Positions 3,622-40,600 of a DNA stretch of 64,000 nt are shown piece by piece. The position numbers and the translations under genes are program-made. Within the stretch, counting starts at the first letter, position 1; every line of letters begins with the position of its first letter. Below the pieces are notes generated by a model. The model made no database searches. It was not told the origin of the DNA and saw only the letters and a program-made list of their open reading frames with translations. The stretch is from the IMG/VR virus record IMGVR_UViG_3300023184_000024, positions 248,001 to 312,000 of that record. One strand, written 5' to 3'.

Positions 3622-3650
3622 TAGACACAGCGTTTGTTTTTTAGTATAAT
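3622..3650 (+). promoter_or_regulatory. sigma70-type promoter
   Basis: TAGACA, N17, TATAAT, 5 nt before the ATG at 3656. Confidence 0.65.
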
Positions 3651-3655
3651 ATTGT

Positions 3656-4201
3656 ATGGACATAATGATTGATATTGAAACAGTTGGCACAGGACCCGAA
3701 GCCTGTATTTTAACCATTGCCGCCCAGACATTTGAACCACTGGAAACTGGCTACAACGAATTAAGCTACTATGCCAGAGTGGACTTCGAAAGCCAGCCAG
3801 GGCGCAACATTGAAGATGGGACTATTCAATGGTGGGCTACTCAACCGGCTGAAGCAAGAGAAGAAGCATTCAATGAAAAGGATCGCATTCCTTTGGGACA
3901 AGCACTTGAAGAGCTTGGCCGTATTATTTGGACTTGCAAACAAAGAACCAAAGACAACGCCGCTCGAATTTGGGCCAACGGTCCTACATTTGACATGAAT
4001 ATTTTAGAACACGCCTATAAAAGTTTTAAAATTCAACTACCTTGGCAGTATTATCGTGTAAGAGACGCTAGAACAATATATGGGCTCTGGCCCGACTTGC
4101 CAAAGTATCCAGCTAGCCATCATGCTTTAGAAGATTGTCGAAGACAAATTGACTTATTGCAAGCTACGCTAAAACATCTTGATGTTAAGGAATTGGCATG
4201 A
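3656..4201 (+). CDS. dexA: DEDDh 3'-5' exonuclease (T4 DexA-like)
   Basis: IMIDIET, WANGPTFD and HHALED motifs. Confidence 0.8.
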   Translation: MDIMIDIETVGTGPEACILTIAAQTFEPLETGYNELSYYARVDFESQPGRNIEDGTIQWWATQPAEAREEAFNEKDRIPLGQALEELGRIIWTCKQRTKDNAARIWANGPTFDMNILEHAYKSFKIQLPWQYYRVRDARTIYGLWPDLPKYPASHHALEDCRRQIDLLQATLKHLDVKELA

Positions 4202-23269: not shown

Positions 23270-24217
23270 ATGAACTTAGGTTTTCCTTATCCCAAGATAA
23301 ATCTAGCCCAGACTTTGCCAGCAGAAGTCACTATCACTGATCATTTGACTGGGTTTGATTTACACTTTAATAATGCTGTTTTAGAAAACCTAAACTGGCA
23401 TGGAAAATCTACAGACTTGTGCCACACACTTGTTTACCATCAGAAACTCGATGATGAAGTGCATAAAAAATATCGCAGTTTAAATCTTGTATTTTCTCCG
23501 GAATTGCAAGATAACATGCACTTTCGGCATTTTCATGATTATCGTATACACCCAGAGTTAACTTTTAAAAATTTTTTATGTTCATTCAATGGCACTGTTC
23601 ACATATCAAGATATCTATTAGTGGCAATGTTGGATAAGTTTGGATTGTTTGACCCACAGTACTCAAGTAAAAATTTTAGTTTAACCAACAACGAACTCAA
23701 CGGGCATCTTAGTAACCTTGCTAATAATAATTTAACATATCTTGGAAAGTTTTTTTCTAACAATTCAGAATTTCTGGAAACAAAATACACATTTGGACAT
23801 ACTAGATTTGATCACAACAAAAACATTTACAACCTGGAATCTAAGTTAACAGATAGTTTTGTCAACATTGTATCTGAAACAATGGCAACTAGTTACGTGC
23901 CATTTATCACAGAAAAATTTTTATATAGCATTGTGACTCGTGGATTGTTTGTGGCCTATGCACAACCAAGATGGCACGAATATTTAGAAAATATCTGGGG
24001 CTTCCGTCCGTACAGAATTTTATTTGACTACAAGTTTGACAGCATAGCCGACCCAGTTGAAAGATTACTAGAGTTAATATCGATGGTATCAAAATACAAT
24101 ATTTTAAATGCCGACGATCTCAGAGACTTGTATCAGTTAGAGCACGAGACCATTGAGTACAATTATGATCACTACTTTAGTAAAAATTACATTAAGTCAG
24201 CACTAAAACATGTATAA
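23270..24217 (+). CDS. Glycosyltransferase-like protein with a GT10-type ...ET...F.TEK motif (paralogue 1 of 2)
   Basis: NIVSETMATSYVPFITEKFLYSI...GFRPY...DYKFD. Confidence 0.5.
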   Translation: MNLGFPYPKINLAQTLPAEVTITDHLTGFDLHFNNAVLENLNWHGKSTDLCHTLVYHQKLDDEVHKKYRSLNLVFSPELQDNMHFRHFHDYRIHPELTFKNFLCSFNGTVHISRYLLVAMLDKFGLFDPQYSSKNFSLTNNELNGHLSNLANNNLTYLGKFFSNNSEFLETKYTFGHTRFDHNKNIYNLESKLTDSFVNIVSETMATSYVPFITEKFLYSIVTRGLFVAYAQPRWHEYLENIWGFRPYRILFDYKFDSIADPVERLLELISMVSKYNILNADDLRDLYQLEHETIEYNYDHYFSKNYIKSALKHV

Positions 24218-25013
24218 CAAAGTCACAGTATCCGGTTGTAGTTTTACATACAATGCCACTTGGCCAGACTATTTGTTCAGTGGTAGCAAGATACGTAATT
24301 TAGCCCGCGCCGGAGCCGGCAATCGATTCATTGGACATAGTGTAATTTCTTCTGTGCTGGAAGACCGACCGGACTTTGTGTTTATACTCTGGAGTGGTGT
24401 GAATCGTTGTGACCTAGCAATAACTGACGGGAGCGTGGCCAAAGAACTTACCGGCCAAACTCAATACCACGGCCAAGTTGATTCAACTTGTTATCTTTTC
24501 AGTGGAGGTGACAAATACAACAGTAGTATTGTTAGGAATTATCAAAATATAAGAGATGACTCTTGGCCCGATGTTGGGTCGCTGGATGACTTTTTGTTAT
24601 TGCCAAAAAAATTGCAAGAAGAGTGTACTAACTCAAATTTGTTTTGGTGGAACAACTATGGCGCAGACAACGTAATGCACAATGCATTTATGTCTAATTA
24701 TATAGAAAACGGCAAATCGTTGGAAGATCAGACGTATCTAACTATTATGCAAACATTGGATTTTTTAGATAAACAAAAAATCCCCCACAAGTTTGGATTC
24801 ATATATAACCCATTCGATGCAGACAATCAAAAACATTTTGGTTGTCTTAGCCATAATAGCAAGTATCATGGTTGCATTGACTGGGGGAAGTATGTTACAA
24901 TTACACCATACGAGTTCGGGATAAAGTACAATTATCTAAGCAACGATCAGTACCACCTAACCAAAGATGGCATGGAACAATGGGCTGATAACATTCGTAA
25001 ATTTATTTTTTAA
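24210..25013 (+). CDS. SGNH/GDSL-like protein (paralogue 2 of 4)
   Basis: VSGCSFT, GAGN, LWSGVNRCD, DQYH. Confidence 0.55.
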   Translation: MYNKVTVSGCSFTYNATWPDYLFSGSKIRNLARAGAGNRFIGHSVISSVLEDRPDFVFILWSGVNRCDLAITDGSVAKELTGQTQYHGQVDSTCYLFSGGDKYNSSIVRNYQNIRDDSWPDVGSLDDFLLLPKKLQEECTNSNLFWWNNYGADNVMHNAFMSNYIENGKSLEDQTYLTIMQTLDFLDKQKIPHKFGFIYNPFDADNQKHFGCLSHNSKYHGCIDWGKYVTITPYEFGIKYNYLSNDQYHLTKDGMEQWADNIRKFIF

Positions 25014-26799: not shown

Positions 26800-27294
26800 A
26801 TGTCCGATAACAACAGCAATCAAGCAAAGGGTCGTAACAGCATTGACGGCAAAGTTAACAACTCGTTGATCACGTTTATTAATCGAAACGTATCAGAGTA
26901 CCCTACAGAAGTAGGCGGCCCTAAGTTTGATCTAGTGCCTGTTGAAAAACAAAAAGATATCATGCTTAATGTGGCTCGTATGCACGGCCAGCAAGAGTAT
27001 AATCGTATCATGGAACTAGTGTCTGTGCTACAAAAACAGGCCGACAGCATAAAACGTAGACTTGAAATAACTGACATGGTACACCAGGCTGTTTATCAGT
27101 TTCAGACATACCACGGACAGATATATTGGTTAGTGTACGATTCGAGAAAAAATTTTACAAGATTGGTGTTAACAGGACCAACAGATTGGTGCACAGGTAA
27201 ACCCCAAGAATATGACTATATTTGTCGAGTAAAATGGTTGGGCGATTATACCTGGATTGAAGTCAATGATAAAGGAAATCCAATAAATGACTAA
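26800..27294 (+). CDS. Hypothetical protein (possibly DUF2452-like)
   Basis: Coiled segment followed by YQFQTYHGQIYWLVY; family call from memory only. Confidence 0.5.
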   Translation: MSDNNSNQAKGRNSIDGKVNNSLITFINRNVSEYPTEVGGPKFDLVPVEKQKDIMLNVARMHGQQEYNRIMELVSVLQKQADSIKRRLEITDMVHQAVYQFQTYHGQIYWLVYDSRKNFTRLVLTGPTDWCTGKPQEYDYICRVKWLGDYTWIEVNDKGNPIND

Positions 27295-28048
27295 TATACT
27301 TTTTTCCAATACAGAAAACAGTCACACGCATAGCTTAGAAACACTTGAAGCACTGTATGAGTTTGATGACTTTATGCAAAGCATTGTCAGCATGGTTGAC
27401 ATGGGATGTGGCTCGGGCCTCGATCTTGAATGGTGGGCAACACGCACTACCAGAGATGAAAATCCCGAGCCGTTAAACATTCAATGCACAGGAATAGATA
27501 TAAAAGATCGATTAGGCCTTCCTCGGGCATATGGAAATATTCGTTACCAAAAACAAGATTTTGAAGAAACGATTGTGGGAAGACAACGCTATGATTTAGT
27601 ATGGGCACACGATAGTTTTCAATATGTTGTTGATGTGTTTGGCACTCTAAAAAATTGGCACAAAGTCATGAACGAAAACGCCATGTTGGTAATCACTATT
27701 CCACAAACAACTAACCTAGTTGGAAATAAGCAGGTGTTTGATCAGCATGATGGATCTTATTATAATTGGACAATGCCCAGTTTAATACACGCTCTGGCAG
27801 TCTCGGGATTTGATTGTAGAGACGGGTTTTTTAAAAAAGAAGTGAACGATCCTTGGCTACATGCCATTGTTTATAAAGGCACTGTGGAGCCCTTGGATCC
27901 AAGAAAAACACGTTTGTATGACTTGGTAGATCTCAAAGTCTTGCCTGAGACTGCTGAAAAAAGTGTAGTAAAATATGGATTTCTACGGCAACAAGATTTG
28001 GTGTTGCCCTGGGTAGACCGCAGTCTCCGATGGATGGGGCAGGAATAA
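27287..28048 (+). CDS. Class I SAM-dependent methyltransferase
   Basis: VDMGCGSG, TGIDI, YDLVWAHDSFQY. Confidence 0.8.
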   Translation: MTNILFSNTENSHTHSLETLEALYEFDDFMQSIVSMVDMGCGSGLDLEWWATRTTRDENPEPLNIQCTGIDIKDRLGLPRAYGNIRYQKQDFEETIVGRQRYDLVWAHDSFQYVVDVFGTLKNWHKVMNENAMLVITIPQTTNLVGNKQVFDQHDGSYYNWTMPSLIHALAVSGFDCRDGFFKKEVNDPWLHAIVYKGTVEPLDPRKTRLYDLVDLKVLPETAEKSVVKYGFLRQQDLVLPWVDRSLRWMGQE

Positions 28049-28082
28049 TAAATATAATTCAACTCAAGTTGAATTATCTATA

Positions 28083-28652
28083 ATGAACAATGAAAATTAT
28101 CAACAAATTCAAACCATGCATGCCGATGGTATGTTTGACAACGGTGAAAAACAATTCAAGATAATACAACCGTTCATTGCTGAACACACCCCACCTAATA
28201 TTTTAATTTCAGGATGCGGCAACGGCGCATTAATATCTGCTATTAAACATACACATCCTGAAATTAAAGTGCACGGATATGAGCCTACAAATCCTAGATT
28301 TAATATACTGCCATTGGGGACATTTGATTCAGTGATATCAATAGATGCATTGGAATACATCAATCCTGATCACATTGAAGACACACTAGAAATAATCAGT
28401 GAAAAAATACAACGTCTTGGATTTTTTACCATTGCTTGTCATCCTTCTAGGAAGTCATTGCCCGATGGGCAAAATTTTCATTCAATAATCAAAGAACCGG
28501 ACTGGTGGCGCCACAAAATACTAAGACACATGGATGTAAGTATTGTCAACGAGTGTATCGAGGTTTTTGATAAACGAGATAAGTGGCCAGAAGTTTTTGG
28601 TAGCAAATATAGTGTTGTAGTTAGAAAAAATGAGCTAAAAAGTTATTATTAG
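28083..28652 (+). CDS. Methyltransferase-fold protein
   Basis: ISGCGNG, GYEP, FDSVISIDALEYI; TAAATA at 28049. Confidence 0.65.
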   Translation: MNNENYQQIQTMHADGMFDNGEKQFKIIQPFIAEHTPPNILISGCGNGALISAIKHTHPEIKVHGYEPTNPRFNILPLGTFDSVISIDALEYINPDHIEDTLEIISEKIQRLGFFTIACHPSRKSLPDGQNFHSIIKEPDWWRHKILRHMDVSIVNECIEVFDKRDKWPEVFGSKYSVVVRKNELKSYY

Positions 28653-28680
28653 ACCAATGTCTAATAATATTAAATAACTC

Positions 28681-29439
28681 ATGCAAAATATTGTAATTGT
28701 AACCGGCGGGTTTGACCCCATCCATTCTGGACATATCTCTTATCTTAATCATGCTGATCACCTAGGCGATTACCTAGTGGTGGGATTAAATTCCGACGCA
28801 TGGCTTGCCCGTAAAAAAGGCCGCCCTTTTATGCCATGGCGTGAACGTATGACGGTGTTGGGCAACCTGCACATGGTTGACGAAGTAATTGAGTTCAACG
28901 ACGACGATGGGTCTAGTGTTGATGCCATACGTCAAGTCCGAGAAAAATATCCAGATGCACGTATTATCTTTGCCAATGGCGGAGATAGAACCAAGGACAA
29001 CATTCCAGAAATGGTGTTCGATGATGTGGAGTTTGTGTTTGGTGTTGGAGGAGAAGATAAAGCCAATTCCTCGTCCTGGATTTTAGAAGATTGGAAAAAG
29101 CCCCGAACAACTCGTGCATGGGGTTACTATCGTGTGCTACACGAAGTAGGCACTCATACCAAACTCAAAGAACTAACAGTAACACCCAAGACATGCTTGA
29201 GCATGCAACGTCACGAACACCGTGCTGAGTTTTGGTTTGTAGCCGAAGGTGAGGCTGCAGTCTATACCTTGGATTCGTCGAGCGACCATGACCTAGTCGG
29301 GCACTACAAACTGCATGAGCACATTTTTATTAACTTAGGGCAATGGCACATGTTGTGCAATGAAACTGACCAACCACTTAGATTAATTGAAATACAATAC
29401 GGCAATAATTGTATAGAAGAAGACATCGAACGTCAATGA
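28681..29439 (+). CDS. Cytidylyltransferase (RfaE-II/TagD-like) fused to a cupin (PMI type II-like)
   Basis: VTGGFDPIHSGH (HxGH), GLNSD, ANGGDR; C-terminal LSMQRHEHRAEFW...IEIQYG...EEDIER. Confidence 0.88.
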   Translation: MQNIVIVTGGFDPIHSGHISYLNHADHLGDYLVVGLNSDAWLARKKGRPFMPWRERMTVLGNLHMVDEVIEFNDDDGSSVDAIRQVREKYPDARIIFANGGDRTKDNIPEMVFDDVEFVFGVGGEDKANSSSWILEDWKKPRTTRAWGYYRVLHEVGTHTKLKELTVTPKTCLSMQRHEHRAEFWFVAEGEAAVYTLDSSSDHDLVGHYKLHEHIFINLGQWHMLCNETDQPLRLIEIQYGNNCIEEDIERQ

Positions 29440-30122
29440 AGCCAATTCCTGTATTTGTCGGCTACGATCCTAGAGAAGCTATAGCGTATCATACTTGTGT
29501 TAATAGTATTATACGTAATGCCAGTAAACCGGTGGCTATTATTCCTGTAGCATTAAACTTATTCAAAGACTACAAAGAAACACACACTGATGGCAGCAAT
29601 CATTTTATCTACACACGTTTTCTTGTGCCACACTTAATGGACTACACTGGATGGGCAATTTTTATTGACGGTGACATGATTGTGCGTGGAGACATTGTTG
29701 AGTTATGGGATTTGCAAAACCCTTACATGGATGTTATGGTAGTCAAACACGATTACAAAACACGCATGCCTGTTAAATATCTAGGAGCACGAAATGAAGA
29801 CTATCCTCGAAAAAATTGGAGTAGTGTTATTCTGTGGAATTGTAATAGTTTTCCTAACCGGCGACTTACTCCCGAGTTTATACAGAAATCCACAGGCAGT
29901 GAGCTCCACCGCTTCTCGTGGCTAGATGATGATCGCATAGGTGAACTGCCTTCGGAATGGAATTGGTTGGATGTTGAATACGAGTGGAACCCATCGGCCA
30001 AGTTGATTCATTACACACTAGGAACTCCGTGCTTTCATGAATTTTCCAATCAAGGCAACTTTGCCAATGACTGGCACAGAGAACGCATACTCACTGAGTA
30101 CTGCCAGCAACGCAGTATATAA
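29436..30122 (+). CDS. GT-A glycosyltransferase (GT8-like)
   Basis: Start corrected to 29436. VFVGYDPRE, FIDGDM, KNWSSV, WNWL, IHYTLGTP. Confidence 0.8.
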   Translation: MKPIPVFVGYDPREAIAYHTCVNSIIRNASKPVAIIPVALNLFKDYKETHTDGSNHFIYTRFLVPHLMDYTGWAIFIDGDMIVRGDIVELWDLQNPYMDVMVVKHDYKTRMPVKYLGARNEDYPRKNWSSVILWNCNSFPNRRLTPEFIQKSTGSELHRFSWLDDDRIGELPSEWNWLDVEYEWNPSAKLIHYTLGTPCFHEFSNQGNFANDWHRERILTEYCQQRSI

Positions 30123-30123
30123 A

Positions 30124-30930
30124 ATGAGTCCAACTGACTTTGTTTATCTCAGTGACAACGGCAACGATGAGTACATAAACATGTTGGCCAAAGCTGTTGG
30201 CGCCAATGTAACAGACACCAAGAAGTTTGATTTTTTAAAAACACACAATCCTATAGTTCTGCGTAGTATTCTTAAGAACAAAATTATGAATCGATGCAGA
30301 GAGACAGGTAGAGATTTTTACTATGTTGACTCGGGATATCTGGGCAATACTGTATCACCCAGGAATCGATTTGGAAATAAACTTTGGCATCGTATAGTTA
30401 AGAACGGGCTACAACACACAGAAATTCGTAAAAGACCAGCAGATAGATTAGATCAAATTGGCACGACATGGTCTAGAAAAAAATTGTCAGGTAGTAAAAT
30501 AATTGTGGCTGCGCCTGACGATAAACCTTGTCGACATTATGGAATTGATCTTGACACTTGGATCAATGACACTGTTTCTAAACTTAAACAGCACACTGAT
30601 CGAGAAATAGTTGTCCGACAACGAGTCAAGCACAAAACAGTGCGCATGGTTCACGACCCACTGTCAACTGTGTTGACACAGGATGTGCATGCTCTAGTAA
30701 CATTCAACAGTAACGCGGCTGTAGAAGCTGTAATTGCAGGAGTACCGGCATTCGTGCTGGCTCCAGAACACGTAGCAATGCCAGTGGCATCCTGCGATTT
30801 GTCAACAATAGAAGATCCATTTTGGCCAGACCAGGATTTAATGCATGACTGGCTATGCCACTTGGCGTACTGTCAGTTTCATGTAAAAGAACTCCAGCAC
30901 AAAAATATTTGGAACATCCTTAATGAATAA
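30124..30930 (+). CDS. GT-B / capsule-synthesis-like protein (paralogue 1 of 3)
   Basis: VDSGY, VVRQR, VTFNSNAAVEAVIAGVP; start uncertain. Confidence 0.6.
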   Translation: MSPTDFVYLSDNGNDEYINMLAKAVGANVTDTKKFDFLKTHNPIVLRSILKNKIMNRCRETGRDFYYVDSGYLGNTVSPRNRFGNKLWHRIVKNGLQHTEIRKRPADRLDQIGTTWSRKKLSGSKIIVAAPDDKPCRHYGIDLDTWINDTVSKLKQHTDREIVVRQRVKHKTVRMVHDPLSTVLTQDVHALVTFNSNAAVEAVIAGVPAFVLAPEHVAMPVASCDLSTIEDPFWPDQDLMHDWLCHLAYCQFHVKELQHKNIWNILNE

Positions 30931-31849
30931 GATATCAGTGGTTGTTTATCAAGATTGCTTGCCAAAGAATAACAACAACCCAGAAAAAATACAGGCCTTG
31001 CAAAAATTCTGGAAAGGTGTTCGCGTGTGTGGTGATAATGCAGTGATGTTGCCGGGCACAGATCTAGTAGACTGTGATGTTGCTGTTATACTTGGGTGGG
31101 TGCATAGTAATTCTAAAAACTCAAAACATCTTAATTTACGAAGACAAGTGATTGACACACAGCTGGCAAAAAACCGACATGTAGTTGTCATTGACAGCAA
31201 TTTGTTTTTATATAAAGACACGGCTAACCCAACTCATTATCTAAGATACAGTTTCAATGGAGTTTTTCCTGATACTGGCATATACTGCGACAGCAAGCCA
31301 ACACAGTCAAATTGGGACCAACTGGCTAAAAAACTGCAACTAGAAATCAAACCTTATCGCACACACGGAAACCATTTGCTTATTTGTTTGCAAAGAAATG
31401 GTGGGTGGAGCATGGGAGGGCAATCTGTGGTATCATGGATAGATGAAACATTGACCGAGATTAGACAACACTCAGATCGTCCTGTTGTACTGCGACCGCA
31501 CCCTGGCGACAAAACCATTTATGATTTTAGCAAGCACTTAAAACAGTTTGACAATGTCACTGTGTCGAGCCCCACAGATTCTTTGGTTGATAATCTTAAA
31601 GATTGCTGGGCTGTGGTTAATCATAATTCTAGCCCAGCTGTGGCAGCCGCTATTGAAGGATTTCCGATATTTTTAACAGACCCTGATAACAGCCAGTGTA
31701 GAGAAATTGCAAATACTGATTTCTCACTGTTAGAAAACCCAACATTGCCCGAAAGACAGGCTTGGCTCAACCGACTAGCAATGTTTCATTGGGATTTTGA
31801 CGATCTTCAACAAGGCCACTGCTGGAATCACATGCGGAAGTACCTGTAA
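30923..31849 (+). CDS. GT-B / capsule-synthesis-like protein (paralogue 2 of 3)
   Basis: VIDSN, LRPHPGD, VVNHNSSPAVAAAIEGFP. Confidence 0.6.
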   Translation: MNKISVVVYQDCLPKNNNNPEKIQALQKFWKGVRVCGDNAVMLPGTDLVDCDVAVILGWVHSNSKNSKHLNLRRQVIDTQLAKNRHVVVIDSNLFLYKDTANPTHYLRYSFNGVFPDTGIYCDSKPTQSNWDQLAKKLQLEIKPYRTHGNHLLICLQRNGGWSMGGQSVVSWIDETLTEIRQHSDRPVVLRPHPGDKTIYDFSKHLKQFDNVTVSSPTDSLVDNLKDCWAVVNHNSSPAVAAAIEGFPIFLTDPDNSQCREIANTDFSLLENPTLPERQAWLNRLAMFHWDFDDLQQGHCWNHMRKYL

Positions 31850-32555
31850 TATATTCCTGGAGTTTCTGAGCCCACTCGTGCCTAACCTGGCGCATCTCAT
31901 CTGACTTGTAGATCTTTTTTCGATAATCACGATTTAGATATGTAGAGTCTTGGTTATTGCCAGTTACGTCATATCGATCATGTATCACTGTTGCCGAGAT
32001 TGCACGAACTGCACCAATCTCATAACAAATATCTTGTATCCACGAATCGCATAAATTGCACAAACTTAATTTTCCAAAGATATCTATCCAGACCCGTGGC
32101 ACCAATGGAAACAGTGTAAGCTCACTTCTAAATTTTTCAGTGGCCATGTGTAACATTCCAATAAAATCTATGTTTTCTTTTACTTGGGTGTCCCAGTTTT
32201 CACTGACCATTATACAATCATCATTCCATAGCAACAGCCACTGACCGTTGGCAGTTTTGGCTAACAAGTTATAATAGTTATGTAATTCACTGTACCCCCA
32301 GGTCGGGGTACGATGTAGTTGTGAAGTTGCTCCAAACGTACCCAATAGCTCTGGCCAAAGACTAGAATTTAAGTACTTGTGTGTTTCAACATCGTCCTGG
32401 TCGTAGGCCACAGTGATTTCAATCAACTTTGGATTGGCAGCCTTTTCTAACAGTGAGCGCACAGTGCGCTCTAATAGGTGTACTCGTTGTCGTGTTGGTA
32501 ACATCACTGAAATTAATGTGTGTGGCTTCATGAAAATACTTAGCAGTGTGCCCAT
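31767..32555 (-). CDS. GT2-like glycosyltransferase
   Basis: ISVMLPTRQR, AYDQDD, LLWNDD. Confidence 0.75.
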   Translation of the reverse strand: MGTLLSIFMKPHTLISVMLPTRQRVHLLERTVRSLLEKAANPKLIEITVAYDQDDVETHKYLNSSLWPELLGTFGATSQLHRTPTWGYSELHNYYNLLAKTANGQWLLLWNDDCIMVSENWDTQVKENIDFIGMLHMATEKFRSELTLFPLVPRVWIDIFGKLSLCNLCDSWIQDICYEIGAVRAISATVIHDRYDVTGNNQDSTYLNRDYRKKIYKSDEMRQVRHEWAQKLQEYITGTSACDSSSGLVEDRQNPNETLLVG

Positions 32556-32557
32556 AC

Positions 32558-32569
32558 TATAAATATTTA
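32558..32569. promoter_or_regulatory. Bidirectional late-type promoter (palindrome TAAATATTTA)
   Basis: TATAAATA on + (32558-32565) and TAAATA on - (32564-32569), between divergent GT genes. Confidence 0.6.
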
Positions 32570-32571
32570 AT

Positions 32572-33228
32572 ATGAAAGCTTATGTAATTGGATTGTCTCG
32601 CATACCATCGTCGAGTTCTAGTGCACAACGTGTCATCAATGATCTTAAACAATTTGGTGTAGATGCTGAGTTTTTTGAAGGAACGTATGGAGATAAAGTC
32701 GCAAAGATCTTTGCCAAAGAACATCGCACACTATACCACACCAGTTTTAAAGGAAACCCAGTTGATGATGAATATCGTGCCTCGTGCATGCGACCGGGTG
32801 TAATGGGGTGTTTTCACAGTCATTACCGTCTCTGGGAACAATGTGCAAAAAACAAAGAACCAATATTAATTTTTGAAGATGATGTGATTTTTGAACGTGG
32901 ATTTATTCCAGTAGACTGGCATGATGTTTTGTTGTTGGCCACTGGCAAAGAAGTGTACACCAATGAGTTCTACGCCTCTAAACTTTATACCCCAGAAGGT
33001 GAACCACAGGCGGGCAAGTTCAAAGGCAAGGTAATGCCCGGCGCAGTGGGCTATGGACTCACGCCCACAGGGGCTAACAAACTGATCAACTTTTACAAAA
33101 CTACGTTCTTGCCAGCTGACAATGCCATGAATATTCGTGTTGTAACTCTACAATGTCACAATTATCTCATGGGCCGTGCTGATACCAATAAAAAAAGCTT
33201 GACTAAAAGCAACCAATGGGTTACTTAG
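32572..33228 (+). CDS. GT25-family glycosyltransferase
   Basis: YVIGL..R, FFEG, GCFHSHYRLW, ILIFEDD, PAD. Confidence 0.8.
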   Translation: MKAYVIGLSRIPSSSSSAQRVINDLKQFGVDAEFFEGTYGDKVAKIFAKEHRTLYHTSFKGNPVDDEYRASCMRPGVMGCFHSHYRLWEQCAKNKEPILIFEDDVIFERGFIPVDWHDVLLLATGKEVYTNEFYASKLYTPEGEPQAGKFKGKVMPGAVGYGLTPTGANKLINFYKTTFLPADNAMNIRVVTLQCHNYLMGRADTNKKSLTKSNQWVT

Positions 33229-34039
33229 AAGCAAGATGTTGCCAGTAAGGCTCACGGCGAGCAACTTTTAGATCTTTGAGTTTACTGTGGCCCAGTGATT
33301 TTCGATCTCCTTTGAGATGATCTAAATAACTCCCCCAACTACTGTTGATCAACGGGTGTCCTTCTCCGTTAATCAGCCCTGCACTCCAATTAAATTCCTG
33401 ACACGGCACGCTGTCACGTACTTTGTCAAATACATAACTGTCATGCCACTCGGCAAATTCAAATATAAAATCCTGATCATAGTATTCTTGGAATCTGTGC
33501 AAAAACATTTGCCCAAGACTTGACTGTAAGTTAACTGCGTATAAGCCACATTCGGTGTATTTTGCTTCCCTGCCAAGAAAACAAATGTCTTTGCCAGCAG
33601 GGCACATGGTTGTTAAAAATTTCATTCCGACCGGTCCGTGGCAAACCATATCGGCATCCATCCAAATTAACCAATCTGCATCTGTATTTTTAGCGGCATG
33701 AAAAATTGAATACACTTTATGTGAAAATCTCACAGCGTCCCATTTAAAACCTTTACCAGCATCTTTTCGTTTTGATCGTATTGGGTCATTGCCTACATCG
33801 CCATTGGCTTTGGGAACCCCACGCCACCGAGTTTTAAATGCTGTCAACTCGGGCACCGAAGAGTCAAGGTCAACCACAGTGAGATTATCAGCAGTTTCTA
33901 AAACGGTACAACCTTCAGCATAGACACGCAATTCAACTTCAGCGGGCCAGTTCTTTACAAATGTTGATATCATTCGTTGACCGTACTGTTGATAGCCTTG
34001 CTTGTTAAACGTTGTTACAACTATAAATTTTTGTGGCAT
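33221..34039 (-). CDS. GT-A-like nucleotide-sugar transferase
   Basis: VVTTFN...YG, RFSHKVYS, IWMDAD (DxD), EWHDSYVFD; minus-strand TAAATA at 34078-34083. Confidence 0.6.
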   Translation of the reverse strand: MPQKFIVVTTFNKQGYQQYGQRMISTFVKNWPAEVELRVYAEGCTVLETADNLTVVDLDSSVPELTAFKTRWRGVPKANGDVGNDPIRSKRKDAGKGFKWDAVRFSHKVYSIFHAAKNTDADWLIWMDADMVCHGPVGMKFLTTMCPAGKDICFLGREAKYTECGLYAVNLQSSLGQMFLHRFQEYYDQDFIFEFAEWHDSYVFDKVRDSVPCQEFNWSAGLINGEGHPLINSSWGSYLDHLKGDRKSLGHSKLKDLKVARREPYWQHLASK

Positions 34040-34083
34040 AGGTTTTAGATTAAGTAGTTAATGTTATTATATAGGGTTATTTA

Positions 34084-34944
34084 GTGATTAAAACAATGGC
34101 ATATTTTCCCACACAATGCGCCAGGAACAGCGTTGATGTATTGCCTGCGGTGCTGGCTAGTTTAAAAAATGCAGGAATTCAGTTAATTGAAAATTCAATG
34201 GACTGTGATGCCGCAATAATTTGGTCAGTGCTGTGGCAAGGCAGAATGGCCGCAAATCAGTTTGTGTATGAACAGTACCGACAACAAGGCAAGCCGGTTA
34301 TCATAGTTGAAGTGGGTGCATTGCATCGTGGCATTACATGGAAAGTAGCAGTCAACAATGTAACCGCCGACGGGTATTACGGACATCGTGATAATTTAGA
34401 TCTTGATCGTCCAAGGAAACTTGGTATTGCACTAAAACAAAAATCTGTCAACAACCCTAACATATTACTAACTGCCCAGCATTCAAAGAGTCTGCAACTA
34501 TCTGGTATAACAAGCATTGAACATTGGTTACTTGATCAAATTAAAGAAATAAGAAAAGTAACAGATCGACATATATTGATACGGCCCCACCCTAGATCTC
34601 CGATCAACAGACTCATGTTTGACAAATTCGTTAAATGGCAAAACCCTACCAAAATAGCAAATACCTATGACGATTTTGATTTTGGCACAGACTATCATGC
34701 CATAGTAAATTATAACAGCGGCCCCGGAATTCAGGCAGCACTTAATGGAACACCAGTTGTGGTTGACCAAACCAGCTTGGCCCACCCTGTGTCTATAAGT
34801 ATTGATACCATTGAGAATCCTGGGAATGTTGACAGAGAGCAATGGTTAATTGAACTTTGCCACACAGAATATACTTTAGAAGAATTGAAACAAGGACTAT
34901 GGTTAAAAAGGCTGCGCCGATCAGCACTCCAAGAACTGGCATAG
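34084..34944 (+). CDS. GT-B / capsule-synthesis-like protein (paralogue 3 of 3)
   Basis: VEVG, IRPHPRS, VNYNSGPGIQAALNGTP. Confidence 0.6.
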   Translation: MIKTMAYFPTQCARNSVDVLPAVLASLKNAGIQLIENSMDCDAAIIWSVLWQGRMAANQFVYEQYRQQGKPVIIVEVGALHRGITWKVAVNNVTADGYYGHRDNLDLDRPRKLGIALKQKSVNNPNILLTAQHSKSLQLSGITSIEHWLLDQIKEIRKVTDRHILIRPHPRSPINRLMFDKFVKWQNPTKIANTYDDFDFGTDYHAIVNYNSGPGIQAALNGTPVVVDQTSLAHPVSISIDTIENPGNVDREQWLIELCHTEYTLEELKQGLWLKRLRRSALQELA

Positions 34945-35645
34945 ATTGTGCGTGTGTAATACATGGCGATGTTTACAGTTGGGAGTATGTAGAAAAACTC
35001 TATTCTGCATTACAACGAAATTTCAGTGTGCCAGTGACACTTCATGTATTCACTGAACACAACAGACCAGTTCCTGCACACATGGTAAAGCATGTTCTAG
35101 AAGATTGGCCCAACATCAAAGGTGCTAGAAAGGCCTGGTGGTACAAGATGCAATTGTTTAATCAAAAAAACTTTCAAGGACAATTGCTTTATTTTGATTT
35201 GGATGTAGTGATAACAGGAAGTCTCGATTGGATATTGGGATTAAGCCCAAGCCACTTCTGGACCATACACGATTTTAGATTTTTATGGAAACCAAATTGG
35301 ACCGGCATGAACTCCAGTGTGATGTATTGGGATACTTCAAAATGGAATCAAATTTGGGTAGACTTTGCTGAAAAAACTGTGGACAATGTCAGCAAACAAC
35401 ATCCGGGCGACCAAGACTACATTGGCTCGGTCATTACTGAAAGCCAGAGACGTTTCTTTAATAAAAAATTTGTAAAAAGTTGGCGATGGGAAGTCAAAGA
35501 TGGCGGCCTAGACATGACTACTCGTGCTTATCGTAAACCCAACGCTGGTTCATCTCTGTTGCCAGAGACCAGCATTGTTGTTTTCCACGGCAACCCCAAG
35601 CCACATCAAATCCAAGACAGTGTGATAACCACGCATTGGGTGTGA
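34899..35645 (+). CDS. GT-A glycosyltransferase (GT8-like)
   Basis: Start corrected to 34899 (AAGGA RBS). WWYKMQLF, YFDLDVVI, NSSVM, GDQD, FHGNPKP. Confidence 0.75.
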   Translation: MVKKAAPISTPRTGIDCACVIHGDVYSWEYVEKLYSALQRNFSVPVTLHVFTEHNRPVPAHMVKHVLEDWPNIKGARKAWWYKMQLFNQKNFQGQLLYFDLDVVITGSLDWILGLSPSHFWTIHDFRFLWKPNWTGMNSSVMYWDTSKWNQIWVDFAEKTVDNVSKQHPGDQDYIGSVITESQRRFFNKKFVKSWRWEVKDGGLDMTTRAYRKPNAGSSLLPETSIVVFHGNPKPHQIQDSVITTHWV

Positions 35646-35685: not shown

Positions 35686-35714
35686 TTGACCAGAAATTGC
35701 CCATTTTGTATAAT
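35686..35714 (+). promoter_or_regulatory. Early sigma70 promoter
   Basis: TTGACC, N17, TATAAT followed by ACTAGT. Confidence 0.85.
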
Positions 35715-35745
35715 ACTAGTATTGTAAATTAATAAGGAGTCGATA

Positions 35746-36021
35746 ATGTCCGTTATTGAATATGCCGATTATGATACTAGATTAATATTAGAATGTGATA
35801 ATGGTCCCAATATTGATTCAGACGATTATGTAAATACTACAAAATCAGTTGATTGGAATATCAGTAATCTTTATGTCATGGGCGATTTTGAACCCGAGGA
35901 TATTGCTGAAATATTAGGCATTACCCTATTTAGAGTGGCTCAATGTCTAGCCCCACACGGCCTGGATTTTCCCGAGTTTAATGAGCCTGTGTGCTTTGAT
36001 CACAACGGAAATGTGTTGTAA
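35746..36021 (+). CDS. Small acidic hypothetical early protein
   Basis: Own promoter and AAGGAG RBS. Confidence 0.75.
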   Translation: MSVIEYADYDTRLILECDNGPNIDSDDYVNTTKSVDWNISNLYVMGDFEPEDIAEILGITLFRVAQCLAPHGLDFPEFNEPVCFDHNGNVL

Positions 36022-36041
36022 AAACACAACACACATTTCGG

Positions 36042-36070
36042 TTGACCGATATTTCCCAATTTGCTATAAT
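36042..36070 (+). promoter_or_regulatory. Early sigma70 promoter
   Basis: TTGACC, N17, TATAAT followed by ACTTGTAT. Confidence 0.85.
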
Positions 36071-36101
36071 ACTTGTATAGTAATTAAAAAGGAGCTCAGG
36101 C

Positions 36102-36281
36102 ATGCAAATGCGCACAGCAATCAAAGTTATTAAAAAAGAGGCAAATTTTTTGGGCATGGGCTTTTTGGAAACTCTGCAATTCATCCAGAAAAACCCCTTG
36201 GCTCAGCCCCATCAAGCTCTGGAAGCTTATAAGGTTGTTATGGGCGAGGGCACCAAGTTGTTTGTGCCACTTGACCAATAA
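36102..36281 (+). CDS. Small hypothetical early protein, 59 aa
   Basis: Not in the track. MQMRTAIKVIKKEANFLGMGFLETLQFIQKNPLAQPHQALEAYKVVMGEGTKLFVPLDQ; AAGGAG RBS and promoter. Confidence 0.75.
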   Translation: MQMRTAIKVIKKEANFLGMGFLETLQFIQKNPLAQPHQALEAYKVVMGEGTKLFVPLDQ

Positions 36282-36299
36282 TTCAACTAGTGCTATAAT
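36271..36299 (+). promoter_or_regulatory. Early sigma70 promoter
   Basis: TTGACC, N17, TATAAT followed by ACTTGTAT. Confidence 0.85.
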
Positions 36300-36329
36300 A
36301 CTTGTATAAACTAAAAAAAGGAGCTGGCA

Positions 36330-40058: not shown

Positions 40059-40600
40059 GCATTGTGTGCTACACAGGCGGCACCTGCGGCGATCTTATAA
40101 CTGCACTAATAGATCCCACAGATGTAGTTTTTAGAAACAATGCAATTGTGCATAGCCCAGATCGAATTCGACTAAAACGTCCAGACTTGTTTGACAGCGA
40201 CATAGACAAATCTCTGTACATTGACCAAGTCTCAGAAAAGTACTCTAGTATACCCAGTCACGATCTTGCATATCATATTGCCTGCGACCATTCTTTTGTG
40301 TCTATTGTTGTTGAAGACTTTTCAACAGCATTGTGGGCCGCTCAGAGATTTAAAAAATTACATAGGTCAGAATCCTGGACCAGAATGACAGACAGTTGTG
40401 GAGCAAGCTCAGTAGAGGATTATGCGCAAATACTTGTTGACTATGGACAGTTGGTATCCAACTACACAGACAAAATTATAAAACTCGAATCAATTGTGCA
40501 AGGGCATGCCATACAACAATTAGGCAAAATTGACCTGCCCGTTTCTGACCAAGGCCGGGCTATATATAAAGCCTGGTTAGAAAAACAGCATGACAACTAA
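40043..40600 (+). CDS. Hypothetical protein
   Basis: IVCYTGGTCGDLI N-terminus; overlaps both neighbours. Confidence 0.7.
   Translation: MDNSLSIVCYTGGTCGDLITALIDPTDVVFRNNAIVHSPDRIRLKRPDLFDSDIDKSLYIDQVSEKYSSIPSHDLAYHIACDHSFVSIVVEDFSTALWAAQRFKKLHRSESWTRMTDSCGASSVEDYAQILVDYGQLVSNYTDKIIKLESIVQGHAIQQLGKIDLPVSDQGRAIYKAWLEKQHDN

What the first reader, a model, noticed from the sequence alone, without database searches (positions are those of the whole stretch)
27287..35645. Eleven-gene glycan-building island under late-type promoters
Seen: two methyltransferase-fold genes, a cytidylyltransferase-cupin fusion, two GT8-like, one GT2, one GT25, one other DxD GT-A and three paralogous capsule-synthesis-like GT-B genes. 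TAAATA motifs lie at 28049, 28671, 32560, 32564(-) and 34078(-). No flippase or exporter gene is present. Known: these families build LPS and capsule oligosaccharides. Inference: a cytoplasmic pathway that glycosylates and methylates the virion (e.g. the S/T-rich sheath, spike and 15878 protein), or remodels host surface glycans. Late timing favours virion decoration over DNA modification.
Basis: partly seen in the sequence, partly recalled or inferred. Interest (0 to 1): 0.65.

Follow-up and report, generated by a model that had tools for sequence, protein, structure and literature searches.

The report
Swappable sugar-chain gene island in giant phage
A giant freshwater bacteriophage carries an 11-gene set of soluble sugar-adding and methylating enzymes that is real and apparently switched on late, is reshuffled between close relatives, and includes an undescribed virus-only relative of bacterial Kdo-transferases, but what the sugar chain is attached to is still unknown.

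Summary
Window 27287-35645 carries eleven genes: two SAM methyltransferases, a cytidylyltransferase-cupin fusion, five GT-A-type glycosyltransferases and three paralogous GT-B enzymes.

The genome is a complete 352.8-kb lake-water phage of the Rak2/GAP32/CBB group. The island fills a variable slot between uvsX/uvsY and a UvsW-like helicase. Isolated relatives have no island there. Uncultured relatives keep g3 in the slot, and usually g4 and g6, but swap or invert the other glycosyltransferases.

The three GT-B paralogs fold like the CMP-Kdo-dependent transferases KpsC, WbbB and KrkA. Two keep the CMP-binding RxHP motif. None keeps the catalytic Asp of QxxxD, so they are not ordinary members of those families.

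TAAATA is a genuine positional signal. It precedes virion genes and not replication genes, and five island genes carry it.

The phage encodes no exporter, flippase or initiating transferase, and no island protein has a membrane segment. It also lacks every known enzyme that makes a hydroxylated DNA base.

My best reading is late cytoplasmic glycosylation of virion proteins (about 0.4). Host lipopolysaccharide or glycolipid remodelling (0.25) and DNA glycosylation (0.2) remain open. Late timing does not exclude DNA.

The parts
26800..27294 (+). DUF2452-family gene. It is the first occupant of the variable slot after uvsY and overlaps the g1 start by 8 nt. Any role in the glycan pathway is unknown.
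   Evidence: Pfam PF10504, 29 bits. It is absent from this slot in relatives.
27287..28048 (+). g1: class I SAM-dependent methyltransferase of the small-molecule / O-methyltransferase type, not a DNA methyltransferase family.
   Evidence: Above cut-off for Methyltransf_11, _12 and _23, with BioC/UbiG-like NCBIfam hits. Homologues sit next to uvsY in relatives.
28049..28054 (+). TAAATA late-type motif, 34 nt upstream of g2, lying inside a 16-nt inverted repeat (28049-28082).
28083..28652 (+). g2: methyltransferase-like protein.
   Evidence: PHROG methyltransferase phrog_24759 at 8e-19. Pfam hits are below cut-off. A 31%-identical region lies under the gene annotated FkbM-family methyltransferase in Caulobacter phage CcrSC.
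28671..28676 (+). TAAATA motif 10 nt upstream of the g3 ATG, with no Shine-Dalgarno sequence. It is the probable promoter of the g3-g6 operon, in the leaderless-type spacing class.
28681..29439 (+). g3: fusion of a HIGH-motif nucleotidyltransferase (closest to RfaE domain II / HldC / TagD) with a type II phosphomannose-isomerase cupin. It is the conserved sugar-activation core of the island.
   Evidence: Pfam PF01467 and PF01050. TIGR02199 at 6e-23. PDB hits to ECT, HldC and TagD. The HxGH motif and the cupin metal ligands are visible in the sequence. More than 8000 homologues, of which the top 120 are 76-92% identical.
29436..30122 (+). g4: retaining GT8 glycosyltransferase, WbbM-like.
   Evidence: Pfam GT8, 31 bits. 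WbbM (6u4b) at 6e-4. 79-83% identical in close relatives and 44% in Pelagibacter phage Mosig.
30124..30930 (+). g5: KpsC-like GT-B paralog that lacks the RxHP motif (it reads RQRV) and the Gln of QxxxD. It may be degenerate or use another donor.
   Evidence: Weak PF05159 and DUF6716 hits.
30923..31849 (+). g6: KpsC/WbbB/KrkA-fold GT-B with R191-x-H193-P194, S236-S237 and E245 as CMP-binding elements. Q157 is kept, but Gly161 stands where the QxxxD nucleophile Asp should be.
   Evidence: Model pLDDT 89. Foldseek top hits are all beta-Kdo transferases, down to 1e-9. VIA Z 12.8-14.1 against 10.7 for the next hit. Motifs. 3900 homologues.
31767..32555 (-). g7: GT2-like GT-A (weak call). It converges on g6 with an 83-nt overlap that is conserved in relatives. 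A paralog lies in a second locus of the genome.
32558..32569 (.). A 16-nt divergent intergenic region holding TATAAATA on the plus strand (12 nt before g8) and TAAATA on the minus strand (14 nt before g7). Both are in the leaderless-type spacing class.
32572..33228 (+). g8: GT25 glycosyltransferase.
   Evidence: Pfam PF01755, 69.6 bits. PDB hits to procollagen galactosyltransferase 1, bacterial GT25 and Mimivirus R655.
33221..34039 (-). g9: retaining GT-A of the GT6/GT8 fold type, with an invariant DxD (D128-A-D130).
   Evidence: Model pLDDT 92. Foldseek hits to alpha-1,3-GalT, blood-group GTA/GTB, glycogenin and WbbM at about 3e-7. Alignment. Homologues in Mosig and podovirus MW202713.
34078..34083 (-). 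TAAATA motif 44 nt upstream of g9.
34084..34944 (+). g10: third KpsC-like GT-B paralog (alternative ATG start at 34096). It keeps RPHP and the Gln, but has Ser in place of the nucleophile Asp. There is no TAAATA on its own strand upstream.
34899..35645 (+). g11: virus-type GT8-like GT-A. It stays in backbone orientation in relatives where g3-g10 is inverted.
   Evidence: phrog_1962 at 2e-23. Atlas structural TM 0.94 to viral GT8 clusters. Orientation.
35686..36325 (+). Right-hand transcriptional boundary: three copies of a 55-nt sigma-70-type promoter cassette (TTGACC-N17-(TG)CTATAAT...AAGGAG) driving small genes and a conserved AAA ATPase.

Best explanation
The island is a phage-encoded, wholly cytoplasmic glycan-assembly line.

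Proposed mechanism:
- Late in infection, TAAATA promoters switch it on. Several of them sit 10-14 nt from the ATG with no Shine-Dalgarno sequence.
- g3 makes one activated sugar. Its cupin half isomerises a ketose phosphate to a manno-configured aldose phosphate. Its HIGH-motif half couples the corresponding sugar-1-phosphate to a nucleotide, with host kinase, phosphatase or mutase steps in between. The product is most likely an NDP-heptose or NDP-mannose.
- The host supplies the other donors, CMP-Kdo and UDP-hexoses.
- The GT-B paralogs add an ulosonic acid of the Kdo type. g6 and g10 have a CMP-binding site; g5 may be degenerate.
- Five GT-A enzymes (GT8 g4 and g11, GT6/8-like g9, GT25 g8, GT2-like g7) add hexoses.
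- g1 and g2 O-methylate the product.
- The acceptor is a phage-made macromolecule. I think it is most likely virion proteins, decorated before or during assembly.
- The glycosyltransferase set is exchanged between close relatives, so different strains should display different glycans, much as bacterial O-antigen loci do.

Shown: gene families, folds, motifs, paralogy, promoter-motif statistics, lack of exporters and membrane segments, conservation and turnover in relatives.

Inferred: donor identities, the order of steps, methylation of sugars, and above all the acceptor.
For: - Family and fold assignments.
- CMP-site motifs in g6 and g10 (RxHP, then SS 43 residues later, then E) match the spacing described for KrkA in PMC12887879.
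- TAAATA is positionally enriched (44% against 4-13% for controls). It precedes sheath, tube, terminase and structural genes but not replication genes. The same type of motif was proposed as the late promoter in relatives CBB and GAP32 (PMC5259590). No sigma-70-type cassette lies inside the island, while three follow it immediately.
- All eleven proteins lack transmembrane-like segments. The whole phage lacks ABC-2, Wzx and Bac_transf genes.
- In two relatives with 94-95% identical RecA, g3 and g4 stay at 79-85%. The other glycosyltransferases drop to 27-65% or are replaced.
- A quartet of KpsC-like GT-B, GT8, g9-like GT-A and methyltransferase recurs in unrelated phages of different hosts: Pelagibacter phage Mosig, Caulobacter phage CcrSC beside its tail-fibre genes, and a podovirus beside terminase and portal together with a gene annotated tibC.
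- Precedent for virion glycosylation comes from mycobacteriophage capsid and tail-tube glycans, as summarised in PMC12619734.
- Against DNA as the target: no ThyA-type hydroxymethylase or hydroxylase, TET/JBP dioxygenase or C5 DNA methylase. ThyX is present. Restriction-site palindromes are avoided.
Against: - There is no direct evidence for any acceptor.
- The island sits in the replication and recombination module, not among structural genes.
- A stand-alone homologue of the g3 N-domain lies between DNA polymerase and uvsX in cyanophage P-TIM68.
- One relative (L016) keeps only g1 and g3 in the slot, with no glycosyltransferase within about 10 kb downstream.
- The virions that carry the shared quartet are structurally unrelated, so a common protein acceptor is not obvious. 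By contrast, lipid A-Kdo and phosphatidylglycerol are common to all Gram-negative hosts.
- S/T enrichment of structural proteins is unremarkable.
- No RNA data exist for this phage, so 'late' rests on a motif alone.
- g1, g10 and g11 lack their own TAAATA.
Confidence: 0.4

Rival explanations
1. Remodelling of the host envelope. The soluble glycosyltransferases work at the inner face of the membrane on lipid A-core or on a (lyso)phosphatidylglycerol anchor, as KpsS and KpsC do. Host MsbA/Lpt or a host ABC transporter then exports the altered glycolipid. This would change the receptor landscape, for example to stop progeny or competing phages adsorbing to infected cells and debris.
For: - The enzyme set mirrors a lipopolysaccharide core and capsule-linker toolkit: Kdo-transferase fold, RfaE-domain-II-like nucleotidyltransferase, GT8 of the WbbM/Waa type and GT25 of the LOS type.
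- In ABC-transporter-dependent pathways, methyl or beta-Kdo caps terminate chains. This is my own knowledge; WbbB is described as adding a terminal beta-Kdo in PMC9587256.
- The acceptor would be common to all Gram-negative hosts, which fits the spread of the quartet across phages of different hosts.
- A phage-encoded exporter is not needed for this route.
Against: - A late-type motif and the absence of early promoters fit poorly with superinfection exclusion.
- g3 is conserved as strongly as RecA and is present throughout a very large lineage, which is unusual for a host-specific accessory function.
- There are no membrane-anchoring segments, although a simple hydropathy scan could miss amphipathic C-terminal helices such as that of KpsC.
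- The phage is apparently lytic. No integrase search was done.
Confidence: 0.25
2. DNA hypermodification. The island builds a glycan on a modified base of the phage genome, after replication and before packaging, to block host nucleases. Turnover of the glycosyltransferases would reflect an arms race with modification-dependent restriction.
For: - The island lies between uvsX/uvsY and the UvsW-like helicase.
- From my own knowledge of the T4 map, beta-gt and gene 42 lie next to uvsX.
- In cyanophage P-TIM68 the homologue of the g3 N-domain lies between DNA polymerase and uvsX.
- Phage DNA glycosyltransferases have been shown to add Kdo and heptose to 5hmC, the heptose route needing a cytidylyltransferase-like enzyme. 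Such gene clusters often neighbour replication genes, helicases and methyltransferases (bioRxiv 10.1101/2023.12.21.572611).
- Such transfers are reported to happen late (abstract of PMC13326640).
- A conserved core with variable glycosyltransferases fits an arms race.
Against: - The phage has no known route to a hydroxylated base: no ThyA homologue, no TET/JBP and no C5 methylase. It uses ThyX.
- GC-rich palindromes are avoided. AGCGCT occurs 0 times against 17.9 expected, and palindromes are ten times more often depleted than non-palindromes. This argues that cytosines are exposed to restriction.
- Eight glycosyltransferases plus two methyltransferases far exceed the mono- to trisaccharides described on DNA so far.
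- The Kdo DNA glycosyltransferase in that study is T4 beta-GT-like, not KpsC-like.
- g1 and g2 are not DNA methyltransferase families.
Confidence: 0.2
3. Another cytoplasmic product: a soluble or lipid-linked oligosaccharide or glycoconjugate that is neither on the virion, nor on DNA, nor exported. It might act as a sink for host nucleotide sugars. Alternatively, g1 and g3 might have a nucleotide-metabolic role unrelated to the neighbouring glycosyltransferases.
For: - L016 keeps g1 and g3 without nearby glycosyltransferases.
- The CTP_transf_like family also contains NMN, FMN and pantetheine adenylyltransferases, which give weak hits.
- Sequestration of lipopolysaccharide sugars is discussed as a possibility in bioRxiv 10.1101/2023.12.21.572611.
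Against: - The best matches of g3 are sugar- and polyol-phosphate nucleotidyltransferases, and it is fused to a sugar-phosphate isomerase cupin.
- In most relatives g3 is directly followed by g4 and other glycosyltransferases in one operon.
- Eight distinct transferases suggest a defined structure rather than a sink.
Confidence: 0.12

Closest known systems
Retaining beta-Kdo glycosyltransferases: KpsC (GT107), WbbB (GT99), KrkA (named KrkA-GT140 in PMC12887879)
   Same: g6 has the same modified GT-B fold; it is the best match by two independent aligners. It has the (K/R)xHP CMP-binding motif, a Ser-Ser pair about 43 residues later and a following Glu, and it keeps the Gln of QxxxD (motif definitions from PMC10148158 and PMC12887879).
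   Different: The nucleophile Asp of QxxxD is Gly in the whole g6 family (28 of 28 sequences) and Ser in g10. g5 lacks both HP and Gln. There is no detectable sequence similarity to any solved chain. The proteins are single-module and about 270-310 aa, with no membrane-anchoring region. The family is almost entirely viral. The double-displacement mechanism is therefore unlikely; an inverting or otherwise different mechanism is implied.
Type II phosphomannose isomerase / GDP-mannose pyrophosphorylase (ManC/AlgA type), and HldE / HldC heptose-1-phosphate adenylyltransferase
   Same: Like ManC-type enzymes, g3 combines a PF01050 cupin isomerase domain with a sugar-phosphate nucleotidyltransferase in one chain. 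These would be the first and last steps of an NDP-sugar pathway. Its transferase half is most similar to RfaE domain II / HldC.
   Different: The transferase half is a small HIGH-motif (PF01467) domain placed N-terminally, not the PF00483 fold. Scores are far below the equivalog cut-offs (81 against 181 bits for TIGR02199). The fused form was found only in uncultured phages. No phage in the isolate-based phage collection has it; isolates carry only separate halves. The substrate is unknown.
Glycosylation gene sets of mycobacteriophages, and the glycan machinery of giant viruses (chloroviruses, mimiviruses, CroV)
   Same: These are virus-encoded soluble glycosyltransferases acting in the cytoplasm on virion proteins without host secretory machinery. 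PMC12619734 summarises glycans on mycobacteriophage capsid and tail-tube subunits. The co-occurrence of methyltransferases in those gene sets is my own recollection and was not checked here. g8 resembles Mimivirus R655 and collagen galactosyltransferase. g9 resembles proteins of Tetraselmis virus, CroV and mimiviruses.
   Different: No glycan has been shown on these virions. The island lies in the replication module. The Kdo-transferase-like triplet and the g3 fusion are not part of the described systems.
Phage DNA glycan hypermodification gene clusters (T4 alpha/beta-GT; 5hmC/5hoC-dependent clusters)
   Same: Clusters of glycosyltransferases with a cytidylyltransferase-like gene next to replication genes. 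Kdo and heptose have been seen on DNA. Transfer occurs late.
   Different: There is no ThyA-type, TET/JBP or C5-methylase gene anywhere in the genome. Palindromes are avoided. The glycosyltransferase folds differ from the T4 beta-GT-like Kdo/heptose enzymes. There are many more transferases than any described DNA glycan needs.
'LPS gene' clusters of T4-like cyanophages and pelagiphages
   Same: Pelagibacter phage Mosig carries g9-, g4-, g5/g6- and g11-like genes, in that order, with two annotated methyltransferase genes just upstream; one gene annotated as a sulfotransferase sits between the two g5/g6-like copies. Cyanophages carry the g3 N-domain at about 50% identity. Their function is equally unresolved.
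   Different: Here the set sits at a fixed slot in a jumbo Rak2-like backbone, has the fused g3 and three GT-B paralogs, and shows documented inversion and allele replacement between near-identical backbones.

Membership tests
Retaining beta-Kdo glycosyltransferases (GT99 / GT107 / KrkA type) | Modified GT-B fold shared by KpsC, WbbB and KrkA | tested here: met
   g6 model has pLDDT 89. The top Foldseek hits are all KpsC, WbbB or KrkA (E 1e-9 to 2.5e-6). VIA Z is 14.1, 13.8, 12.9 and 12.8 over 238-254 residues, against 10.7 for the next fold.
Retaining beta-Kdo glycosyltransferases (GT99 / GT107 / KrkA type) | [quoted passage not shown] | tested here: met
   g6 has R191-P-H193-P194 (R in 30 of 30 and HP in 29 of 30 alignment rows). 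g10 has RPHP. g5 has RQRV, so the feature is not met for g5. Motif definition from PMC12887879.
Retaining beta-Kdo glycosyltransferases (GT99 / GT107 / KrkA type) | Invariant QxxxD motif with the Asp nucleophile | tested here: not met
   Q157 is conserved in g6 and g10, but position +4 is Gly in the g6 family (28 of 30 rows) and Ser in g10. g5 reads PDDKP. Motif definition from PMC10148158 and PMC12887879. The correspondence rests on position after the first strand of the C-domain, not on a residue-level structural superposition.
Retaining beta-Kdo glycosyltransferases (GT99 / GT107 / KrkA type) | Use of CMP-beta-Kdo as donor and formation of a covalent Kdo adduct | not testable with these tools
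   This needs enzyme assays or intact-mass MS. The phage encodes no CMP-Kdo synthetase, KdsA or SIS isomerase, so any CMP-sugar must come from the host.
Pfam PF05159 Capsule_synth (KpsC/KpsS) | Score above the family's gathering cut-off | tested here: not met
   The only hit is on g5, at 13.5 bits against a cut-off of 20, E = 0.007. In the Atlas, one related viral cluster has 18% of members carrying PF05159.
GT8 | Pfam PF01501 above cut-off, with a retaining GT-A fold | tested here: met
   g4 scores 31.2 bits against a cut-off of 24.3 and hits WbbM. g11 is GT8-like only through PHROG phrog_1962 (2e-23) and viral GT8 clusters in the Atlas.
GT25 | Pfam PF01755 above cut-off over the full domain | tested here: met
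   g8 scores 69.6 bits against a cut-off of 24, covering profile positions 4-199 of 199. PDB GT25 hits.
GT2 | Pfam PF00535 above cut-off | tested here: not met
   g7 scores 19.7 bits and g9 scores 20.0 bits against a cut-off of 23.3. By fold, g9 is closer to the retaining GT6/GT8 families. g7 was not modelled.
HldE domain II / HldC (heptose-1-phosphate adenylyltransferase) | Equivalog-level score to TIGR02199, and heptose-1-phosphate specificity | tested here: inconclusive
   It is the best NCBIfam hit, but at 81 bits against a cut-off of 181.5. The HxGH motif is present. Substrate specificity cannot be tested here.
Type II phosphomannose isomerase cupin (PF01050) | Family score above cut-off, with cupin metal ligands intact | tested here: met
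   74.2 bits against a cut-off of 23.6. An RxWGxY-type motif, HxH...E and G..H...N ligand motifs are visible in the translation. The expected motif patterns are from my own knowledge.
Phage DNA glycosylation systems | An enzyme that creates a hydroxylated or hydroxymethylated base (ThyA homologue, or C5-methylase plus TET/JBP dioxygenase) | tested here: not met
   PF00303, PF12851 and PF00145 all give no hit in the complete genome, while the control genomes gave hits for PF00303 and PF00145. ThyX is present. A PhyH-like protein and a QueE-like radical SAM enzyme elsewhere were not resolved.
Wzx/Wzy- or ABC-transporter-dependent surface polysaccharide loci | An initiating phosphoglycosyl transferase and a flippase or ABC-2 exporter | tested here: not met
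   PF02397, PF01943 and PF01061 are absent from the whole genome. ABC ATPase hits are only below cut-off.
T4-type late promoters | A TATAAATA-like -10 element upstream of virion genes, dependent on a gp55-type sigma factor | tested here: inconclusive
   The TAAATA core is positionally enriched and tied to virion genes. The full 8-mer is rare: 7 in the genome, 3 in the window, at chance level. A gp55-like sigma factor was reported in relative CBB (PMC5259590) but was not searched for here. No transcript data exist.

The most novel reading that the evidence does not exclude
An abundant lineage of freshwater jumbo phages coats its virions with a methylated, Kdo-containing oligosaccharide that resembles a lipopolysaccharide core. 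It is built by a virus-specific family of CMP-ulosonic-acid transferases that have lost the Asp nucleophile of KpsC and WbbB, so they would use a different mechanism. A hypervariable, invertible locus with a conserved sugar-activation core encodes the pathway, giving in effect an 'O-antigen locus' that defines phage serotypes.
Probability: 0.22. Interest if true: 0.8.

Novelty: new variant of a known kind. Interest (0 to 1): 0.55.

Why it matters
Phage-encoded glycosylation is known for DNA, for a few virions and for host O-antigens. In aquatic phages the many 'LPS-like' genes have never been given a target.

This island offers a well-defined and very widespread test case. g3 has more than 8000 cluster representatives and g6 and g9 have 3400-3900 each. 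The locus has a conserved activation core and fast-changing transferases at a fixed slot.

It also exposes two enzyme types worth biochemical study:
- a viral branch of the Kdo-transferase fold that keeps the CMP site but lacks the catalytic Asp;
- a compact cytidylyltransferase / phosphomannose-isomerase fusion conserved as tightly as RecA.

If the glycan is on the virion, it implies serotype-like diversity in phage particles. That would affect adsorption, aggregation, grazing and host recognition in lakes. If it is on DNA, it implies a route to base glycosylation without any known hydroxylating enzyme.

Tried and rejected
- Megablast of the island against isolated phages found nothing.
- A pattern-based scan of IMG/VR with g6 found no relative, although the word-based protein search then found thousands.
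- Sequence searches of g6, its family profile, g7 and g9 against PDB chains gave nothing useful. Only fold comparison placed g6 and g9.
- The full T4 octamer TATAAATA is at chance level in the window, so I tested the 6-mer core by position instead.
- I looked for inverted repeats flanking the invertible g3-g10 block and found none convincing.
- S/T-richness of virion proteins as a pointer to acceptors gave only modest enrichment, and the sheath is similar in length to sheaths of phages that lack an island at this slot. I dropped this line.
- No RNA run holds the phage. The contigs I laid on the island confirm its presence and identity in a second study but say nothing about expression.
- The 'moraphage' paper (PMC12619734) describes a different lineage and does not cover this island.
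- The Freeman et al. mycobacteriophage paper is not held in the library, so I cite it only through PMC12619734.
- I did not run the complex-prediction tool or the large representative-protein search. No binding claim is made, and the word search already answered the question of relatives.
- The isoelectric points of the transferases (5.1-9.4) do not discriminate between DNA and other acceptors.

Full report
**What the window is.** The window is bases 248001-312000 of a single 352,754-bp virus record with direct terminal repeats, rated 100% complete. Its RecA/UvsX is 62-68% identical to that of the Rak2/GAP32/CBB-like jumbo myoviruses (Sinorhizobium phage Phosso, Vibrio phage 2.275.O, Pectobacterium phage CBB, Agrobacterium phage Atu_ph07). 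The island DNA occurs in lake and freshwater metagenomes. Contigs from an independent study match it with no differences and bridge its gene junctions. It is therefore a real, uncultured freshwater jumbo phage, and the island is not an assembly artefact.

**The observation.** Eleven ORFs fill 27287-35645.
- Pfam, PHROGs and NCBIfam confirm a class I SAM methyltransferase (g1) and a weaker methyltransferase-like gene (g2).
- g3 is a fusion of a CTP_transf_like domain with a phosphomannose-isomerase-type cupin.
- g4 is GT8 and g8 is GT25. g7 is weakly GT2-like. g11 is a virus-type GT8-like enzyme.
- g9 had only a sub-threshold GT2 hit. Its model (pLDDT 92) is a retaining GT-A of the GT6/GT8 type, with an invariant DxD.
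- g5, g6 and g10 are paralogs (blastp 1e-14 to 1e-17).
- Better starts are 29436 for g4, 30124 for g5 and 34899 for g11. These agree with homologue lengths and with the public gene call for g11.

**The three GT-B paralogs.** No sequence method links them to a solved structure. A high-confidence model of g6 (pLDDT 89) is closest, by both Foldseek and an independent aligner, to the CMP-beta-Kdo-dependent retaining transferases KpsC, WbbB and KrkA. These stand clear of ordinary GT-B enzymes, at Z 12.8-14.1 against 10.7.

The literature defines these enzymes by a (K/R)xHP CMP-binding motif and an invariant QxxxD motif whose Asp is the nucleophile (PMC10148158, PMC12887879). How the paralogs compare:
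- The g6 family and g10 have RxHP, a Ser-Ser pair 43 residues later and a following Glu. This matches the spacing of the CMP-contacting residues described for KrkA.
- The Gln is kept, but the Asp position is Gly in all 28 g6-family sequences in the alignment and Ser in g10.
- g5 lacks both motifs.

These proteins therefore probably bind a CMP-activated ulosonic acid. CMP-Kdo is the one every Gram-negative host supplies. They cannot use the Asp-adduct mechanism and should not be filed in GT99 or GT107. The family is almost exclusively viral. The phage has no CMP-Kdo synthetase, KdsA or SIS isomerase of its own.

**g3.**
- The N-terminal half carries the HxGH signature. It is closest to RfaE domain II / HldC, then to TagD and ECT.
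- The C-terminal half is a confident PF01050 cupin with intact metal ligands.
- The architecture parallels ManC-type enzymes, which hold the first and last steps of GDP-mannose synthesis in one chain.
- By analogy, I infer a ketose-phosphate isomerase plus sugar-1-phosphate nucleotidyltransferase that makes an NDP-heptose or NDP-mannose. This is inference; the substrate is untested.
- g3 is the most conserved island gene. It has more than 8000 homologues, and the best 120 are 76-92% identical. That is as conserved as RecA and more so than terminase in the same relatives.
- Isolated phages carry only the separate halves.

**Genomic setting and turnover.** The backbone order is terminase, structural gene, SSB, UvsX, UvsY, UvsW-like helicase. 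It is shared with Vibrio phage 2.275.O, Phosso and CBB, where only 1-3 kb separate uvsY from the helicase. Here about 15 kb is inserted at that point.

Uncultured relatives on contigs of up to 369 kb carry a glycan island in the same slot.
- Two relatives have RecA 94-95% identical to the window's. In them g3 and g4 are 79-85% identical, while the other transferases are 27-65% identical, replaced by other families, or absent.
- The replacing families include Methyltransf_21, GT17, epimerases and a UDP-glucose dehydrogenase.
- The block g3-g10 is inverted relative to the backbone in three relatives and not in five loci (two of them near-duplicates of others). g11 keeps backbone orientation in the inverted locus where it could be placed.
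- One relative keeps only g1 and g3 in the slot.

This is the pattern of a surface-polysaccharide locus: conserved sugar activation with diversifying transferases.

A smaller module recurs in unrelated phages. It consists of a KpsC-like GT-B, a GT8, a g9-like GT-A and a methyltransferase.
- Pelagibacter phage Mosig carries it.
- Caulobacter phage CcrSC carries it between tail-fibre genes and lysozyme.
- A 42.7-kb podovirus carries it beside terminase and portal, together with a gene annotated tibC.

**Promoters.** The count of TAAATA is not above chance, but its placement is. It is the rarest A4T2 hexamer in the genome, yet 44% of copies lie in sense within 60 nt upstream of a start. The 14 composition-matched controls reach 4-13%.

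It precedes sheath, tube, terminase and two structural genes. It does not precede SSB, UvsX, UvsY, UvsW, primase, DnaB or RNaseH (Fisher p = 0.011). An ATAAATA motif was proposed as the late promoter in CBB and GAP32 (PMC5259590).

Inside the island it stands before g2, g3 (heading g3-g6), g7, g8 and g9. g1 overlaps the upstream DUF2452 gene, which follows uvsY. g10 and g11 have no own motif. Three copies of a sigma-70-type cassette begin 40 nt after g11. 'Late-type' is therefore reasonable for most of the island, but it rests on a motif. No RNA data exist.

**What the glycan is attached to.** All eleven proteins lack transmembrane-like stretches. The complete genome has no ABC-2 permease, Wzx flippase or initiating phosphoglycosyl transferase.

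This excludes a self-contained surface-polysaccharide pathway. It does not exclude action on lipid A-core or a phospholipid anchor followed by host export, because that is how GT8, GT25 and KpsC-type enzymes normally work.

DNA is a serious rival.
- Phage transferases can put Kdo and heptose on 5hmC with the help of a cytidylyltransferase-like enzyme. Such clusters neighbour replication genes, and transfer is late.
- A homologue of the g3 N-domain sits between DNA polymerase and uvsX in cyanophage P-TIM68.

Against DNA:
- The genome has no ThyA homologue, TET/JBP dioxygenase or C5 methylase, and it uses ThyX.
- It avoids GC-rich palindromes. AGCGCT occurs 0 times against 17.9 expected.
- Eight transferases plus two methyltransferases are far more than any described DNA glycan needs.

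For virion proteins I count four points:
- the promoter class shared with structural genes;
- the precedents in mycobacteriophages (via PMC12619734) and giant viruses;
- the position of the module next to tail-fibre or packaging genes in two other phages;
- the universal, strongly conserved presence of g3 in the lineage.

My weights are 0.4 for virion glycosylation, 0.25 for host envelope remodelling, 0.2 for DNA and about 0.12 for something else. The general statement has a confidence of about 0.85. That statement is: a late-motif, exporter-less, hypervariable glycan-assembly locus with a conserved activation core.

**Novelty.** Phage glycosyltransferase clusters are a known kind. Four things are new here:
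- the viral Kdo-transferase-fold family without the nucleophile, present in triplicate;
- the RecA-level conservation and fused architecture of g3;
- the fixed-slot, invertible, allele-swapping organisation in a very abundant uncultured lineage;
- the recurrence of a core module across phage families.

I rate it a new variant of a known kind, with moderate interest. The interest is limited mainly because the acceptor is unknown.

Noticed in passing
whole genome; in the window e.g. 18376 (terminase), 19953, 28671, 32560, 32564(-), 55409: The spacing from TAAATA to the start codon is bimodal. 27 genes have it at 10-14 nt (peak 12), none at 15-20 nt and 46 at 21-54 nt. None of the 27 near-class genes has a Shine-Dalgarno-like motif, against 65% of the far class. 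If transcription starts about 6 nt after the motif, as in T4 (my own knowledge), these would be leaderless late mRNAs.
   Followed up: partly
window 35686-35740, 36042-36096, 36271-36325: Three copies of a 55-nt promoter cassette, TTGACC-N17-(TG)CTATAAT...AAGGAG, immediately after the island. 'TGCTATAAT' is also enriched upstream of genes across the genome. This is probably the early or middle promoter class.
   Followed up: partly
genome 105.4-112.4 kb (L014:7412-14374), outside the window: A second sugar or modification locus. It holds a class II aldolase, a Bax1-I membrane protein, a GT2-like paralog of g7 (35% identity), a Methyltransf_24 gene, a weak PhyH-like dioxygenase hit, a QueE-like radical SAM enzyme (phrog_2076, 1e-49), a stand-alone cytidylyltransferase (phrog_7878) and an SGNH-like protein. 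It lies next to the RNaseH / 5'-3' exonuclease gene.
   Followed up: partly
window 40590-41720: A radical SAM enzyme with an N-terminal SPASM-like domain lies just upstream of the UvsW-like helicase. Radical SAM genes also sit in the uvsX-uvsW region of several relatives. Any link to the glycan pathway is unknown.
   Followed up: no
whole genome: Selective palindrome avoidance. AGCGCT occurs 0 times against 17.9 expected, CGTACG 8 against 21.7, GGGCCC 10 against 24.2 and GTGCAC 49 against 91. 12.5% of 6-mer palindromes have O/E below 0.6, against 1.2% of non-palindromes.
   Followed up: partly
window 28681-34944 compared with L007, the P0003 contig and the P0218 contig: The g3-g10 block occurs in both orientations relative to the backbone among relatives. 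g11 and the backbone keep their orientation. No flanking inverted repeats were found in the window.
   Followed up: partly
window 31767-31849: g6 and g7 converge and overlap by 83 nt. A similar overlap of 53-92 nt is kept in relatives.
   Followed up: no
window 23270-25013: Two genes with no family hit (315 and 267 aa) lie between SSB and UvsX. They have no counterpart in the isolated relatives at that position.
   Followed up: no
L021 (Prochlorococcus phage P-TIM68, 132805-134930): A stand-alone homologue of the g3 N-domain lies between DNA polymerase and UvsX and is followed by a 2OG-Fe(II) oxygenase. Several T4-like cyanophages carry the same domain at about 50% identity.
   Followed up: no
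L009/L010 8544-10004 and L011/L012 (486-490 aa gene): In more distant relatives the g4-like GT8 is the N-terminal part of a 486-490-aa protein, so it is fused to a further unidentified domain.
   Followed up: no
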